A stretch of 42,392 nt of DNA from Octopus bimaculoides (GCF_001194135.2 NC_068985.1:74456425-74498816); one strand, 5' to 3'. Shown: positions 17,785 to 23,900, numbered from the stretch's first letter. Made by a program: numbers and translations. Notes: generated from the letters alone by a model not told the origin.

Positions 17785-18846
17785 ATTTCACTTAAGTTAA
17801 ATGTCATTTAGCATCAACTATGAATAACATTGGTGAACATGGTTCTGTTGTCTGGTGCTGGAGATATGTTTCCAGGTGATTTTGAGGTGCTAATTTCAGA
17901 CTTAGAAATCAATTTTGCTCTGTCACGCCCAAATTTTTCACAAAGTCAAATCTCCACGTTTCAACATTTCCAGTATTGTCAAAATTTCTGATGATAGATT
18001 TGGCCTCATCAAATGCCGGCTCACGTATGTAGCTTGACATAACTTTGAAAACATAAATGTTCAATATCATTTAAAGTAAATGCAACTACAAAAGTAAAAA
18101 CACAATTATTGCGTTAAGTATCTTTGGTAAATAAAAAGCATTATGCTTGAGAAATTTACATCTACACAGTTTTGAATACCATAACGATGACAGAAATATG
18201 TTTTATGCAACTAGATGTTACTAAACAACACACTTCTGTGGTCCTTGACATCATACATGTTTCATATTTTTGGAATTTGTCTGTAGATATGCCTACGCTT
18301 TGCTTGATTTAGTGTGGCTATCGCTAAAACTCAGGTGAGATACGTGTTATTACACCTTTAACTATTTCTTATGAAAATTTCATACTGTAAATGCGCCTTA
18401 GTGATTTAATTTTGAGATCACAGCATCATCAAAGAACCTTACAAAGGACTTTATGTTATGTATACTCTTTATGGAACTTTAGCATCAAGCATCTTCCTTT
18501 GCTTACAGTTGTCGATTCTGAAAATGCTTTATCAGTGGGGTACTTTCAGAACCGGGCAAGTGAGGTAAGAGCTTACGACAAACCTTTAGTTACTTAAGAC
18601 AGACATCTACGATGGATTCCCTTTAACCATAGAATAATGTATGTGTGAATAAGCACTTACCAAAATCTACCGTTGTAATCAAAGATTAAGTTTTTACAAG
18701 GTGCGTATTGTCATGGAAATAATCATATGCACAACTAGAAATGGTTTCAGGCTGATAAACAATTTCTTCAAATATTTACTTTTGTTATATTAGAACGTAA
18801 AGATGCTTTGTACAGAAAGCTGTTCAAATAAATTTAAAATGGTAAA

Positions 18847-20226
18847 TCACAACAGGTATGTTTTATGACAATCTGATGTCGTTTCTCCGGATATAATGAT
18901 GGCACTACTATCACAGACGGTTAATCCCATATGTTTAGAACCATCGTTTGGAATCAAGAATAAATTTATAATATCACCGTCAATTGAAAACTTATAAATT
19001 TTGTTCTCTTTTGAATCTGCAACATAAATGCAACCGTCGTCGCCGACGTCGATGCCACAAGTACAAAACATTTTCATTTTGCTCGATTTATAAATAAATT
19101 TAACTTTCACGGTTTTTACATCAATACATATTACACACTCCTTGCAAAAATCAGAGAACACCCAAGTCCCCGGTGTTGGTAGCACTAAAGTAATGAGGCC
19201 AAAGTAGAATCGGTTTATCTAACACTTCATCGGTAATTAACGATATCAATTCACCTTGCTTGGACAGGAGATCGATTTTCTGTGGTAAGTAACTAGAGTA
19301 AGCTATCAGACCGTTTGCAAGCGCCGCTACTCCGTAGTAGCGATTTTCAATCATTATTTTATCGAGTTCTAGAATTCCATTATGGTAAAGATATGCGATT
19401 TGTCTTGTACAAGGTAAGGTAATTACTACTTGATCCTGTGTTAAATTACTTATCCGACATGGCCAAGAGCTAATCAAACTCGCCTAACAGTTCACTGTTC
19501 TTATTGAATTTCTTTACTTTCTCATTCAGCCAATCAGTTACGAGTAAATTGCCATCTGATAACAGAACGAAATCGTCTATTTGACACTGTCTCTCCGATT
19601 CTACTTTAACCGAGAATTCCATCACTTTCGACACCATCTTAGTTGCAGGTTTTAAGGAAGTTGCTTCCGACTGAGAAAATGGCAATGTAAATATCCATTT
19701 TGTTAGGGCATCGTCTTTATCTGCCATATTTAAACATCTGTCAAATATATTGGAAACACGGGGGCGGTTGTTTGCAGAAAGAATACATTCTCCCATCGAC
19801 TTTTCTTGCAATTTACGGAAACAGTATATAAAATTTGAATTGGGGACAAATGTAATTGTCCTGTTAAGTCTATTCATTATAGTTGTATTGTTTAGTTTCC
19901 AGAGATTAGAAACTTAACGTTTTTATGAACCCCAATAAAACCGAGATTGCGATTGTTTTCGCATGAGCAAATGTATTCGATTGAGGTATATAATGAATCC
20001 AAGAGCTCGTCTCCTTTCCCGAGGTGTTTGTCCAGACTTTCTGCTTCTAATGAATATATCGTATCTAGGTTTTCAATGCAAAGTTTTTCTTTTTCTATTT
20101 TTTCTAGAAGCAGTGTTTCCATCGACTGGCGAGCGCTTCGAATTTCTTTCAATATTTGATCCTTTTGCCAATTTGGTTTGAAAATATATCTTTTTTGGCT
20201 CCTTTGGCTTGAATATATGTCTTTTT
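18847..20226 (-). pseudogene. TRIM-like coiled-coil + six-blade NHL beta-propeller coding region with three 1-nt frameshifts; no RING or B-box visible
   Basis: Four ORF-track segments join into ~460 codons. Coiled-coil-like [25 protein letters not shown], then blades [87 protein letters not shown]. Frame switches at ~19911, ~19477 and ~19162. Confidence 0.8.
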
Positions 20227-20252
20227 CTATTTCAGAAATATCACCAGTTTTC

Positions 20253-20935
20253 TCAGAAGAAAATGCCAGAACACTTCCGATGCCTTCTGCTACAGTTGTG
20301 GATGTTAATCTTACCCAAGCAACAAAATGAAATAAATCACAGATTTTGTGAAGACAGTTCACCTTACGTCTTTTGACATGATATTGGGTGATGAAAGACA
20401 GAGCCTTGGCACCCAAATAATATGTAAGTTATGTGTTGAGACACTGAGACAGTGACTGTTTGAAATAGTTAAGCAGAAAGTTTCCAGCTTAATTTTGTGT
20501 GAAAATTTAGGTGTATATGTTTGACAGCCCACAGATTTATGTGGCTACTGCAGAACAAGTTGCTTTTGGAGACCGTGTTTGGCACTAAAAAAGAAGCATG
20601 GAATGCTTTTACAGTAGTTGTGGCTGATTTCCTGAGAAAGAGAAAGTCACGAAATTATGAAGAATGTCTGCAGAACTTATTAACCAGTTTTCGGGCAATA
20701 TGTTGCAACATGCGTCAAAAAGTGTATTTTCTGCACAGCCATCAGGACTACTTCCCTGAAAATCAGAGTGCAATAAGCAAAGAGCAAGGAGAAATATTCC
20801 ACCAAGTTATCGAGACAATGGGCACTAGATAGCAAAGCAGGTGGAACGCAAACATGATGACTGATTACTGCTGGTGTCTGCAAAAGAACTGTCGTGATTC
20901 AAGTTATTCACGTGAAGTAGCAATGAGGAATTTCA
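20253..20935 (+). pseudogene. Chapaev-3-like transposase remnant (N-terminal Cys domain and C-terminus; centre deleted)
   Basis: [16 protein letters not shown]...ITDFVKTV...LGD...[12 protein letters not shown]. Then KEAWNAFTVVVADFL...NMRQKVYFLHSHQDYFPENQSAISKEQGEIFHQVIETMGTR*QSRWNANMMTDYCWCL, matching the remembered Chapaev-3 pattern HFLHSHLDFFPEN..SDEHGERFHQ...YCW. Confidence 0.85.
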
Positions 20936-23900
20936 CTTTTTGAGAAGCTAGAACTCCAATTTGAAAGAAATATATCTCCTAAGATGTATAATATAGTTGC
21001 TAAGCAATAACATGTCCTTATGGTTTGTATTAGACTCTTATTTTAGTATTAAATTAATGCCAAGACTGACATATTTTTGGTGTTTAAAAAACCTGCCGAG
21101 ATAAAAAAAAATTACTGAGGGTATTTCTGAATCGAGCACCATCATGTTAGGTACAACTAATTGTAAAAATCAAGGCAACTAAACATTTTTCGTAAATAAT
21201 CCACTGTGCGATAAATATCATAATAAAAGCAGCTAACCAACACTGTTAATTAGTGACAAAAACATAGCAATTATGTTTATTCAGAGAACATGCTGTAAAA
21301 AGGAAACTCTGAAGTGACAGAATAAAACTGATTGAAGTTTTGAAATTAACAACATTCCACTTTTAGTCTAAATCAAGTAGAAAAACAAACTCAACATAAA
21401 TTATGTTCAAATTTCTTCCGCAGTGTAATTTTTGCTGATAACAGTTATATAAAATAGTTATCAACCAGCATATTTATTTGTAACTGATGCTTTGACAAGA
21501 AAACAAATTTTAAATGTAGTCTCATAGTACACTTCTCAATAAACACCTCTAGCATCTGACCCACATATGTGCTCAGTCTCCTCCTGTTGACTTTACTATT
21601 GTAAGTTTAATGGATTAGACGCGAGCCAAGAAAATACGGGCACACCTGGCAAGTTCCTGTCATCACTCACTTTGTGTTCAGCTATCTACTTGCAAACAAC
21701 CTTGCGTAGAAATGTATTCCCAGAACGCTGACTATCTGGATGCTCCTCAAATAGGAGTGTTAATATATTTTTATTGGTGTTGCACTTATCACGAAAATAT
21801 TTAAAACTGAAAGCGCAAAGTAATTTTGATGATGAAATCTAGATAATTTTACGATCCACAAAACTCAAAGAAAATTATTGAATTAAATGTAAGTTGCATT
21901 TTTGATGTAAATCACGTAAACATTTAACTATTACAGAGGTCAATCCAGATTTCATGTATAGTTTCTGTAATCTTTTTATTTGATAATATCGAGAATTTGG
22001 ATTGGCTGAAAATATTACGCAATAATTTTCCTTGAAAATTACGTTAAAATCGATAAGCTCTTTCCTTCTAAATATTTCTGAACAACGTAAGGCACTTTAT
22101 TTCAAACTCACAAAGCAACAAATTCTGATAGGTTTCGTACGTCGAAATCATGATTACATTAAACCATAATAAAGGCTATTTATTTTCCAACAACTCAGTA
22201 TGCCTTCTTATAAACCCATTTCATGCATTTGACATTAAAATACAAGTATGAATTTCAACAGCAAATGTCCATCAAAAGTTCGAATATGATACAACAATAA
22301 TCGTATCGTTCACGAGTTTTCAAAAGAAAGTGCGTGCTTTAAATTAAAGTTTACTGAGTAGACGCATGAACTAGTCGTTTGCAAACCATAAAGGTTACCA
22401 AGGTCAGTTGCTTCCTACATATTCTACCTGAATTGGTGTCAAGTCAACAACCCAATTTATGGTATGGTATTCCCTGAATGCAGAAATGGAGAAGATATTT
22501 AAGTAAAACGAATATTGCCATAACAATTCCGAAATATAAACCTCAACCAGTAAAATAATAAATATAATGCGAAATCACTTTCTATTTATCTCAAGTTGAG
22601 AGATGACGTTTAAACGTCATTAGCTCACAGGATTACTGTGGAGTGGTAGCAACAATACAACCAGTGGAAAGTAAGTAATTAGCATTGGAAATCTGCAGGC
22701 GTAGGAAATATTTGTTGGGGAAATAAAAGAAGAAATAGTGCTTTGAAACTGAAGATATATAGACAAGCAACAAATCTTGAGTGTGTATATAGACATTATT
22801 ATTTATAAATCTTCTGAAATATAACAATATATTTCAATATTATTTGATGAAGTAACGAGAAGAGCTGGGGCCGTTAATTGTTCCAGCTCGTACATACACA
22901 CTTTGTTTCGCTGGTTCAAGAGTGGAGAAAACGAAATATTTTCATGTTCGCTCTTGAAAACACAGGCTTCTAAAACAATTAACGGAAGCATGTTTACCTT
23001 TTGCGAATCAACTCCAGTACCGCTGAAAATATCTGCTCATTAAGTCATTTCACAACAAAATTCTTGCAAAATAAATTCAAATTTACTATAAATTGCTACG
23101 CGAAAGAAAAGAAGTTAAATCACCAGCGGATTGAACCTGAAAATCCTGCACCTTGTATGTATGTAAGTATGTATGTATGTATGTATGTATGTTTGTATGT
23201 ATGTGTGTATGTATGTGTATGTATGCATGCGAAATGAAGACGCATATTTGTATGTATGCGTGCGCATGTGTATGTGTGGGTAGGTGTGTTCATGTGTATC
23301 CTCGCCTCCTTGTTTTTCCGATAGCGGAAGACACGAGCACGAGCACTCACGTTCTCTGGATAAAGTCGAGGGTGAGGGTACGGAAGAGAGGAGGAAGCGC
23401 AGTCCCGATAGGAGTGGAAGACACAATTACGACAGCAAATTAGAGGCGAGGAGTTGGGACGACTTGAACATAGTCGTGTATTTATGGAACGAGCATAAGA
23501 GATGAAAGAAAGGGGTTTCCTCATGCATACCATTATGTGTGTGTGCGTAAGTGAGAGAGACATAGAGAGAGAGAGAGAGAGGGGAAGAGAGAGAGAGGAA
23601 GAGAGAGAGAGTATGTGTGTATGTATATATGTGTATCCATGCACACACACACACACACACACACACACACACACACATATATATATATGTTTGTGTGTGT
23701 GTCTGTGTGCATGTGTGTGTATGTATGTATATATGTATGTATGCATGTGTATGCATACATACATATATTACACAGATTAATCCATATCGCTCTCTCCGGA
23801 GTTGAATTAATTGTGAGTGAAATATGTTAAACCCCAATTGAGACTGATTGACTCCATTTAATGGACCCATAATTTGCTTTCGGTACCTCAAAGGCATTAG

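What the first reader, a model, noticed from the sequence alone, without database searches (positions are those of the whole stretch)
17828..21208. NHL/TRIM-like gene nested antisense inside a Chapaev-3 transposon, possibly within its 5' intron
A Chapaev-like subterminal motif lies left of the NHL region (17886-17927), and the transposase start and right end lie to its right. A strong plus-strand donor CAG|GTGAG (18335) and acceptor TTTTTCTATTTCAG| (20235, just before the transposase N-terminus) bracket the insert. CTATTTC occurs at both junctions (18362-18368 and 20227-20233), like a 7-bp TSD. A minus-strand ATTAAA (18405-18410) lies ~35 nt inside the left junction. Two readings fit: a 5'-truncated retrocopy landed in the transposon intron, or a Pack-type Chapaev captured an immune-type NHL cargo and could amplify it. 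I know of no described Chapaev-NHL cargo element, but cannot verify novelty.
Basis: partly seen in the sequence, partly recalled or inferred. Interest (0 to 1): 0.75.

Follow-up and report, generated by a model that had tools for sequence, protein, structure and literature searches.

The report
Dead TRIM-NHL fragment inside decayed Chapaev3 transposon
A broken, non-coding piece of an octopus TRIM-NHL gene sits backwards inside an old, defunct Chapaev3 cut-and-paste transposon; it is a modest example of a transposon holding a host gene fragment, with no sign of function and no way here to test whether it spread.

Summary
The core observation holds, but most of the details are wrong. Window 18533-20168 (minus strand) is a 5'-truncated, frameshifted copy of an intronless Octopus RING/B-box/NHL gene (TRIM45/56-like). 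It covers aa 229-667 plus 314 nt of 3'UTR and is about 93% identical to the parents. It has evolved neutrally since it arose.

It lies inside a decayed, internally deleted Chapaev3 (CMC) element. A profile built only from relatives' termini hits the window exactly three times:
- the left end at 17828 (E=1e-12);
- a canonical right end at 21425;
- an extra internal right end at 21208.

The 17828 and 21425 ends carry the family's A|TAA ... TAA|T target duplication, so the element is 17828-21425, not 17828-21208.

The true NHL junctions are 18532/18533 and 20168/20169, not 18368 and 20234. They show no poly(A) tail and no flanking duplication, and the parent 3'UTR continues past the break. The "CTATTTC TSD" is at chance level, and the ATTAAA lies 123 nt beyond the homology. 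The retrocopy reading is therefore disfavoured.

The most likely origin is DNA-level capture during repair (transduplication). The finding is a new member of a known kind and of low to moderate interest.

The parts
17825..17827 (.). Left copy of the 3-bp target-site duplication, TAA. It is preceded by A at 17824.
   Evidence: Read directly from the sequence. The same A|TAA|CAC... context is seen in relatives L034, L068, L030 and L036.
17828..17960 (+). Chapaev3 left terminal and subterminal region. It starts CATTGGTGAACA (family CACTGGnnnACAAA) and has a GGTGCTAATTTCAGA box about 55 nt in and a TCTGTCAC box about 95 nt in.
   Evidence: nhmmer with a profile of relatives' termini, built without window sequences: 17823-17960 (+), E=1e-12, the best hit in the window. 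Alignment. The right end of L005 alone hits 17870-17960 with E=0.007.
17961..18532 (+). Internal 5' region of unknown origin: either the element's 5'UTR/intron or further filler. It holds the donor-like CAG|GTGAG at 18335.
   Evidence: No homology to the parent loci, to the rest of the window or to relatives. No Pfam or Rfam hit. The donor string is present.
18533..18846 (-). Copy of the first 314 nt of the parent gene's 3'UTR. It ends abruptly without poly(A).
   Evidence: Alignment to L002, L003 and L004: homology stops after ...CTGAAAGTACCCCACTG, while the three parents continue together.
18847..20168 (-). Pseudogenised coding fragment of a TRIM45/56-like RING-B-box-coiled-coil-NHL gene: aa 229-667 plus the stop. 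RING and B-box are missing. It carries three frameshifting indels (-7, -2, +1 nt) and a 9-nt in-frame insertion.
   Evidence: tblastn of P0001. Parent Pfam domains. Sharp 5' break at 20168. Indels and 93.4% identity. Window-lineage changes are 14 synonymous to 42 nonsynonymous, against 15:7 and 15:10 in the parents.
20169..20235 (+). Pyrimidine-rich stretch ending in the acceptor-like TTTTTCTATTTCAG. It is probably the 3' end of the transposase gene's 5'-UTR intron.
   Evidence: Not parental. Positionally equivalent acceptor-like sites lie just upstream of the start codon in L034, L030 and L086.
20240..20458 (+). Chapaev3 transposase N-terminal zinc-finger remnant (aa 1-70). The start codon has mutated to ATC and there are 3 in-frame stops.
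   Evidence: tblastn of P0083 aa 4-70, 38% identity, E=3e-6.
20503..20943 (+). Chapaev3 transposase C-terminal remnant (about aa 410-554, containing the H(4)H region and the GERFHQ...RYQGRW...DYCW block). It has 1 in-frame stop. aa 71 to about 410-423 (depending on the relative) are deleted.
   Evidence: tblastn of P0083, P0103 and P0044, E about 1e-25. phmmer against the representative library gave 2726 relatives.
20944..21208 (+). 3'UTR plus an internal right terminal region (R1, ...CCACTGTG). Its tip is degenerate and its flank is CGA, not TWA.
   Evidence: Relatives' profile hits 21190-21072 (-), E=1.9e-5, from model position 16. Similarity to the L005 3' region scores 54 against shuffles of 20.6 +/- 2.7.
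21209..21425 (+). Second, outer right terminal arm (R2), ending ...TTCTTCCGCAGTG. This is the canonical terminus.
   Evidence: Relatives' profile hits 21430-21284 (-), E=2.6e-6, from model position 2. The core is inverted-repeat-like with the left arm, 33 of 40 nt, z=4.4.
21426..21428 (.). Right copy of the target-site duplication, TAA. It is followed by T at 21429.
   Evidence: Read directly from the sequence. It matches the left TAA and the family rule A-TWA...TWA-T (PMC4079192; relatives).

Best explanation
The interval is one old, non-autonomous Chapaev3 (CACTA-Mirage-Chapaev superfamily) transposon spanning 17828-21425, flanked by a TAA target duplication.

Its transposase gene is dead: aa 71 to about 410-423 are deleted and four stop codons are present. 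It carries a duplicated right end.

Its 5' untranslated region, probably a 5'-UTR intron 72 nt upstream of the former start codon, contains a 1.64-kb fragment in reverse orientation. The fragment comes from an intronless Octopus RING-B-box-coiled-coil-NHL gene (TRIM45/56-like).

The fragment was copied at the DNA level with arbitrary breakpoints, one in mid-coiled-coil and one in mid-3'UTR. The most likely route is template switching or filler capture during double-strand-break repair of the element (transduplication). That is the same kind of error-prone repair that produces internal deletions and duplicated ends.

The fragment was non-functional from the start and has drifted neutrally for about 4% divergence. 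It has no function as a protein.

SHOWN: the identity and limits of the fragment, its neutral decay, the Chapaev3 identity and ends of the host element, and the absence of retrocopy hallmarks.
INFERRED: the repair-capture mechanism.
UNKNOWN: whether the composite ever transposed again.
For: Fragment limits and parentage:
- Protein hit, 84% identity.
- tblastn in four frames.
- blastn to three Octopus parent loci.
- Sharp breaks at both ends.

Neutral evolution:
- 14 synonymous to 42 nonsynonymous changes on the window branch, against 15:7 and 15:10 in the parents.
- Equal neutral-site branch lengths of 24, 25 and 24.

Host element:
- Transposase remnants are collinear on the + strand.
- The family shows the Chapaev motifs C(2)C, LH and H(4)H in the full-length relative P0083.
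- The independent terminus profile gives exactly three hits, at 17823-17960 (+), 21430-21284 (-) and 21190-21072 (-), and nothing else below E=1 in 42 kb.
- The A|TAA|CAT...GTG|TAA|T arrangement matches relatives L034, L068 and L030 and the published Chapaev3 rule.

Against retroposition:
- No poly(A) tail, and the parental UTR continues past the break.
- The shared 7-mer is at chance level.

Timing:
- The host ORF was already decaying when the fragment arrived: 4 stops in 199 Chapaev codons against 0 in 434 NHL codons (by my own rough estimate, not a tool result, p is about 0.01).
Against: - No second copy and no 'empty' copy of this element family could be examined, so an insertion between 18532 and 20169 is inferred from collinearity, not from a read-through copy.
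- The 572 nt at 17961-18532 have no demonstrated Chapaev origin.
- The greater decay of the transposase ORF is also compatible with the fragment landing by unrelated break repair in a long-dead element.
- Pairing of the left end with 21425 rather than 21208 rests on a 3-bp TAA. TAA is this family's preferred target, so it is weak evidence.
- The parent CDS is intronless, so a DNA rather than an RNA origin is not proven by intron content.
Confidence: 0.5

Rival explanations
1. Break-repair insertion unrelated to transposition. A piece of the TRIM-NHL locus was pasted by end-joining or replication-based template switching into a chromosomal break that happened to lie in a long-dead Chapaev3 remnant. 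The transposon played no mechanistic role and the composite never moved.
For: - The breakpoints are sharp and arbitrary, with no TSD and no poly(A).
- The transposase ORF is much more decayed than the fragment: 4 stops in 199 codons against 0 in 434. The element may therefore already have been inert.
- CMC elements look nearly inactive in a recent O. vulgaris repeat annotation: 1 family and 1 recent insertion (PMC13282606).
- No other copy was found in the held octopus DNA.
Against: - A random insertion landing in a rare transposon class is a priori unlikely.
- This copy also shows an internal deletion and a duplicated end, which are typical of transposon gap-repair errors.
- Non-autonomous copies with decayed ORFs can still be mobilised in trans, so ORF decay does not show that the element was inert.
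Confidence: 0.22
2. True Pack-type cargo element. The Chapaev3 derivative captured the NHL fragment and was then mobilised in trans, so several copies with identical junctions exist in the genome.
For: - The composite has canonical outer termini and a perfect A|TAA...TAA|T duplication.
- The fragment is internal to the ends, as in Pack-MULE or CACTA captures.
- Another Chapaev3 transposase fragment lies at 39457-39723, so the superfamily is not unique in this region.
Against: - No second copy was found in 108 kb of octopus sequence.
- The protein search with the fragment found only the full-length orthologue cluster plus three distant relatives.
- No octopus Chapaev3 transposase was found in the protein collections.
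- The left terminus is CAT rather than the invariant CAC.
- A genome-wide nucleotide search could not be run.
Confidence: 0.13
3. One reading: a 5'-truncated processed retrocopy of the TRIM-NHL mRNA, inserted by LINE machinery into the transposon's intron and flanked by the 7-bp duplication CTATTTC.
For: - 5' truncation is typical of LINE-mediated retrocopies.
- The copy contains coding sequence plus 3'UTR only.
- An ATTAAA lies on the right strand at 18405-18410, and CTATTTC occurs on both sides.
Against: - Homology ends 165 nt and 59 nt inside the proposed duplications.
- The 165 nt and 59 nt in between match nothing in the parent loci.
- There is no A-run at either the true or the proposed 3' end.
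- The parental 3'UTR continues past the break and is conserved in three species.
- A shared 7-mer is expected in 89% of shuffles.
- Poly(A)-signal hexamers occur about 2 per kb.
- Intron loss is uninformative, because the parent CDS has no introns.
Confidence: 0.07
4. The fragment was delivered by another, unrecognised mobile element (for example a gene-capturing Helitron) that nested into the Chapaev3 element. In that case 17961-18532 and/or 20169-20235 belong to that carrier.
For: - About 570 nt left of the fragment have no assigned origin.
- Helitrons are reported as recently active in O. vulgaris (PMC13282606).
Against: - No Helitron-like terminal hairpin or CTRR end was seen by eye in the flanks.
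- The flanks are not repeated in the held octopus DNA.
- 20169-20235 fits the transposase gene's own acceptor region.
Confidence: 0.08

Closest known systems
Chapaev3 group of the CMC (CACTA-Mirage-Chapaev) superfamily, e.g. Merrow, Garfield and Conan (PMC4079192)
   Same: - Termini are CAC...GTG.
- The 3-bp TSD is TWA, inserted between A and T.
- Transposase relatives carry the C(2)C, LH and H(4)H motifs.
- Some families have a two-exon transposase gene, and non-autonomous deletion derivatives are common.
   Different: - This copy is a wreck: left tip CAT, the catalytic core deleted, and two right ends in tandem.
- It holds a host-gene fragment, which that paper does not describe for Chapaev3.
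- No direct comparison with Repbase consensus sequences was possible.
Pack-MULEs and gene-capturing CACTA elements of plants (reviewed in PMC13317346; examples recalled from general knowledge)
   Same: A non-autonomous cut-and-paste element with family TIRs and a TSD. Its interior contains a truncated, often antisense, non-functional fragment of a host gene whose parent lies elsewhere.
   Different: - This is an animal (cephalopod) genome and the Chapaev3 clade.
- There is only one captured fragment.
- There is no evidence of multiple copies or of transcription.
Turmoil-1 of C. elegans (PMC2572040), reported there as the first animal case of transduplication of protein-coding sequence
   Same: An animal DNA transposon that has incorporated pieces of host protein-coding genes.
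   Different: In Turmoil-1 the captured pieces lie within the terminal inverted repeats and are conserved. Here the piece is internal, single and decaying neutrally.
Processed (LINE-mediated) pseudogene
   Same: A 5'-truncated, intron-free, dead-on-arrival copy of a coding gene at an ectopic site.
   Different: - No poly(A) tail.
- No flanking TSD at the true junctions.
- The 3' end is not at a polyadenylation site.
- The parent is intronless anyway.

Membership tests
Chapaev3 / CMC DNA transposon | Invariable 5'-CAC ... GTG-3' termini within terminal inverted repeats (PMC4079192) | tested here: met
   The left tip is CATTGG (one transition from CACTGG) at 17828. The right tips are ...CAGTG at 21425 and ...CTGTG at 21208. 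The profile of relatives' termini gives E=1e-12, 2.6e-6 and 1.9e-5.
Chapaev3 / CMC DNA transposon | 3-bp TSD of consensus TWA, inserted between A and T | tested here: met
   The arrangement is A|TAA|CAT... at 17824-17830 and ...GTG|TAA|T at 21423-21429, the same as in L034, L068 and L030. The feature is not met for the internal end at 21208, whose flank is CGA.
Chapaev3 / CMC DNA transposon | Transposase with a DDE core and the C(2)C, LH and H(4)H motifs | tested here: inconclusive
   The full-length relative P0083 has CFLC, PPLHIKLG and HFLHSH. In the window the region with C(2)C and LH is deleted, and H(4)H survives only as YFLHSH. Homology of the remnants is clear: E about 1e-25 and 2726 relatives. 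No Pfam model exists for the family.
Chapaev3 / CMC DNA transposon | Alignment to curated Chapaev3 consensus sequences (Repbase or Dfam) | not testable with these tools
   No TE consensus library was available. The assignment rests on the published hallmarks and on relatives from metagenome and ENA contigs.
Pack-type (transduplicating) non-autonomous DNA transposon | Family TIRs plus TSD, no working transposase, and an internal fragment of a host gene whose parent lies elsewhere | tested here: met
   Termini and TSD. Dead, deleted ORF. Parent loci L002-L004 are non-syntenic with the window.
Pack-type (transduplicating) non-autonomous DNA transposon | Evidence of mobilisation after capture: at least two copies sharing the capture junctions at different sites | not testable with these tools
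No copy was found in 108 kb of held octopus DNA.
Processed retrocopy | Poly(A) tail at the 3' end of homology, coinciding with the parental polyadenylation site | tested here: not met
   Homology ends at 18533 with no A-run. Parental 3'UTRs of three species continue together beyond that point.
Processed retrocopy | Target-site duplication directly flanking the inserted cDNA | tested here: not met
   There is no direct repeat at 18532/18533 and 20168/20169. The proposed CTATTTC lies 59-165 nt away and is at chance level.
Processed retrocopy | Loss of parental introns | tested here: inconclusive
   The parent CDS is a single exon in Argonauta, O. bimaculoides, O. sinensis and O. vulgaris, so the test carries no information.
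TRIM-NHL (RING-B-box-coiled-coil-NHL) protein gene | Intact ORF encoding RING, B-box, coiled-coil and NHL repeats | tested here: not met
   The parent has RING at aa 13-46, B-box at aa 149-181 and NHL repeats. The window copy starts at aa 229, has three frameshifts, and shows a neutral substitution pattern. No N-terminal part lies anywhere in the 42-kb window.

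The most novel reading that the evidence does not exclude
An octopus Chapaev3 derivative acted as a genuine Pack-type vehicle. It captured the coiled-coil/NHL half of a TRIM gene and was mobilised in trans. Several antisense copies would then exist, and they could feed small-RNA or antisense regulation of the parental TRIM45/56-like gene. That would be a cut-and-paste transduplication system in a cephalopod.
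Probability: 0.1. Interest if true: 0.55.

Novelty: new member of a known kind. Interest (0 to 1): 0.3.

Why it matters
Gene-fragment capture by cut-and-paste transposons is common in plants but rarely documented in animals. A Chapaev3 element holding a TRIM-NHL fragment adds a cephalopod example. It also gives precise junctions that can be searched genome-wide. As it stands it is a single, dead, neutrally decaying locus with no evidence of expression or amplification. Its practical value is for repeat and pseudogene annotation: it should not be called a TRIM gene. It is also a seed for a systematic search for transduplication in octopus genomes.

Tried and rejected
1. A second left end at 18165 (CACAGTTTTGAATACC). 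I first took it for the left end of a nested element because it resembled what I thought was the L005 terminus. It was rejected for three reasons: no significant similarity to the right arm (z=0.2), no hit by the terminus profile, and the L005 terminus had been misplaced by 17 nt.

2. The inverted repeat 17907-17926 / 21314-21333 as a sign of some other element. It turned out to be the Chapaev3 subterminal box of the left arm and of the R2 arm.

3. A repeated subterminal 13-mer (TCGATTCAGAAAT) next to the NHL break. It is not enriched.

4. The missing RING/B-box part beyond the transposon, which would mean the gene had been split by the insertion. It is absent from the whole window, and the window is not syntenic with the parent loci.

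5. Rearranged parental sequence in the unexplained flanks. There were no significant hits.

6. Attempts to obtain octopus copies of the transposon for an empty-site test all failed:
- the word-index protein search found one non-octopus hit;
- the representative-library search, the cluster look-ups of its best hits and the profile search returned arachnid, insect, sponge and unnamed metagenome proteins only;
- the ENA relatives L086-L088 share only 72-75% identity, and only in coding sequence;
- an exact look-up of a window ORF was not on record.

8. Rfam and tRNA scans of the region were empty. Pfam on the window ORFs gave only sub-threshold hits.

Full report
WHAT THE WINDOW IS

The sequence is AT-rich (about 33% GC), full of microsatellites and assembly gaps, and without evident intact genes. 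The NHL-like translation of 18850-20250 finds an Octopus bimaculoides B-box protein (P0001, 667 aa) at 84% identity. It also finds an Argonauta TRIM45-like protein at 60% and two unnamed relatives at about 42%. The P0001 cluster holds the O. bimaculoides, O. sinensis and O. vulgaris orthologues, annotated as TRIM45-like or TRIM56-like. The window therefore comes from an Octopus-like genome. The species could not be determined.

THE NHL FRAGMENT

tblastn places aa 229-667 of P0001 on the minus strand at 20167-18850, in four pieces that change frame three times. Nothing resembling aa 1-228 occurs anywhere in the 42 kb. In the parent, aa 1-228 hold the RING (aa 13-46) and the B-box (aa 149-181).

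I fetched the parent loci from O. bimaculoides, O. sinensis, O. vulgaris and Argonauta (L002, L003, L004, L001). In all four the CDS is a single uninterrupted exon.

At the nucleotide level the window matches these loci only over 18533-20168. This is the last 1,322 nt of the CDS, including the stop codon, plus the first 314 nt of the 3'UTR. Nothing in the 10-kb flanks matches, so this is an ectopic copy and not the orthologous locus.

Both ends of the homology are knife-sharp:
- At the 3' end the three parental 3'UTRs continue together past the break, while the window diverges. There is no A-run there.
- At the 5' end the break falls in the middle of the coiled-coil coding region.

Identity is 93.4%, 93.45% and 92.9% to the three parents. 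Relative to the parent, the window carries indels of -7, -2, +1 and +9 nt.

Changes unique to the window copy are 14 synonymous and 42 nonsynonymous, the neutral proportion. The two parental lineages show 15:7 and 15:10. At synonymous plus UTR sites the three branches are equally long (24, 25, 24). The copy has therefore never been under protein-level selection. It is about as old as the split between the O. bimaculoides and O. vulgaris/sinensis lineages, or else the window is from a third, equidistant species.

THE TRANSPOSON

The plus-strand ORF remnant at 20521-20943 belongs to a very large family with no Pfam model: 2726 representative clusters. Full-length members (P0083, 560 aa; P0103; P0044) carry CxxC, LH and HxxxxH motifs. 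A published study names C(2)C, LH and H(4)H as hallmarks of Chapaev transposases. The same study gives CAC...GTG termini and a TWA duplication inserted between A and T as hallmarks of Chapaev3 (PMC4079192).

In the window only two parts of the transposase survive. They are aa 4-70 (20255-20458) and about aa 410-554 (20503-20943); the catalytic middle is deleted. The remnants hold four stop codons.

To define the ends I collected 80 related loci from metagenome contigs. Three complete elements (L034, L068, L030) and further partial ones show the following:
- 5'-CACTGGnnnACAAA ... TTTGTnnnCCAGTG-3' termini;
- A|TAA ... TAA|T flanks;
- two conserved subterminal boxes.

A profile built only from those relatives' termini hits the window exactly three times below E=1:
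- 17823-17960 (+), E=1e-12;
- 21430-21284 (-), E=2.6e-6;
- 21190-21072 (-), E=1.9e-5.

A second, canonical right end lies at 21425. It is followed by TAA|T, which matches A|TAA at the left end. The unit is 17828-21425.

The order of its parts is: left end, 5' region, NHL fragment (antisense), acceptor-like site, N-terminal remnant, C-terminal remnant, 3'UTR, right end(s). This is collinear with intact relatives, which argues for one rearranged element rather than two unrelated fragments.

- The donor-like CAGGTGAG (18332-18339) and the acceptor-like TTTTTCTATTTCAG (ending at 20235) exist.
- The acceptor lies 5 nt before the former start codon (ATC at 20240-20242). Comparable acceptor-like sites lie 7-35 nt before the start codon in L034, L030 and L086. 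A 5'-UTR intron is therefore a plausible family feature, and the fragment would lie within it. Without RNA data this stays a plausible inference.
- The 7-bp 'TSD' CTATTTC is not at the junctions. It lies 165 nt and 59 nt outside the homology, and 89% of shuffles of those flanks share at least one 7-mer.
- The ATTAAA at 18405-18410 is 123 nt beyond the end of parental homology, and such hexamers occur about twice per kb.
- The stretches between the true junctions and the proposed TSDs match nothing in the parent loci.

MECHANISM

A LINE-mediated retrocopy predicts a poly(A) tail, an end at a polyadenylation site and a duplication hugging the insert. None of these is present. Intron loss cannot be scored.

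The arbitrary, clean breakpoints fit DNA-level copying. So do the other scars in the same element: a large internal deletion and a duplicated terminal arm. All are consistent with template switching or filler capture during repair of a break in the element. That is the accepted route to Pack-MULE and CACTA-type transduplication (general knowledge; animal precedent Turmoil-1, PMC2572040).

The transposase remnants are significantly more decayed than the fragment: 4 stops in 199 codons against 0 in 434 (by my own rough estimate, not a tool result, p is about 0.01). The fragment therefore joined an element that had already lost coding capacity. That is compatible with capture in a non-autonomous lineage. 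It is equally compatible with an unrelated repair event in a dead remnant, which is why I give the capture reading only about 0.5.

AMPLIFICATION

I could not test the key prediction of multiple copies with identical junctions.
- No tool searches octopus genomes by nucleotide sequence.
- No octopus Chapaev3 protein exists in the protein collections to anchor a locus fetch.
- The nearest relatives obtained (L086-L088) share only 72-75% identity, and only in coding sequence.

What indirect evidence there is points to low copy number:
- no second copy in 108 kb of held octopus DNA;
- no fragment-like predicted proteins;
- a recent O. vulgaris repeat annotation lists a single CMC family with one recent insertion (PMC13282606).

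VERDICT

- Nested antisense inside a Chapaev3 element: yes.
- In a 5'-UTR intron: plausible.
- Retrocopy with a 7-bp TSD: no.
- Amplifying cargo: untested and not favoured.

This is a dead gene fragment inside a dead transposon. It is a new instance of a known phenomenon, uncommon in animals, and of low to moderate interest.

Noticed in passing
window 39457-39723 (+): A second, separate Chapaev3-like transposase fragment. It corresponds to aa 353-483 of full-length relatives at 32-36% identity and contains stops. The terminus profile gave no hit below E=10 anywhere near it.
   Followed up: partly
window 21209-21425 next to 20944-21208: Two Chapaev3 right terminal regions lie in tandem. The inner one has a degenerate tip and a non-canonical CGA flank. 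A relative, L087 (5036-5165 and 5217-5336), shows two left-end-like regions in tandem, so duplicated ends may recur in this family.
   Followed up: partly
window 17408-17784: An interspersed repeat lies immediately left of the element. It is 72% identical to O. vulgaris locus L004:2877-3259 (minus orientation). It was not classified, and no tRNA or Rfam match was found.
   Followed up: no
window 20163-20224: Two adjacent 31-nt units, 77% alike (TTTTGCCAATTTGGTTTGAAAATATATCTTT / TTTGGCTCCTTTGGCTTGAATATATGTCTTT), straddle the 5' junction of the NHL fragment at 20168/20169. A weak match (72% over 47 nt, E=0.22) links 20183-20229 to parental coding sequence a little further in. This could be chance, or a small local duplication made when the fragment was joined.
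   Followed up: partly
window 18533-18543: The 3' break of the NHL fragment falls exactly at CAGTGGGGTAC (plus strand). This differs by one base in its first eight from the Chapaev3 left terminus CACTGGGG of relative L034. The parents read CAGTGCGGTAC and CAGCACGGTAC. The terminus profile does not hit here, so it is probably coincidence, but a cryptic end is not excluded.
   Followed up: partly
L088:6064-14320 (ENA ERZ25067582, organism unknown): A near-full-length Chapaev3 relative has a left-end match near 6084 and a right-end match near 14269, about 6 kb beyond its ORF. hAT-like (FAM200/ZBED5-type) genes lie in between. This may be a nested insertion or another cargo-bearing element.
   Followed up: no
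window 9521-9940 (+): A 139-aa ORF gave only a sub-threshold Pfam hit (DUF7337, E=0.005). It lies within a stretch of higher GC (about 0.40-0.43) and strong A-over-T skew at 7000-11000. It may be a retroelement remnant.
   Followed up: partly
window 28271-28284: A perfect 14-nt palindrome, AACTGTGCACAGTT, places two CACAGT/ACTGTG motifs back to back. It was noticed while listing candidate termini. The terminus profile gave no hit there.
   Followed up: no
window ~1190-1430, ~11900-12320, ~33230-33310, ~37500-37620, ~39110-39300: Runs of N (assembly gaps) are each embedded in TA- or TATACA-type microsatellites. None lies inside 17828-21425.
   Followed up: no
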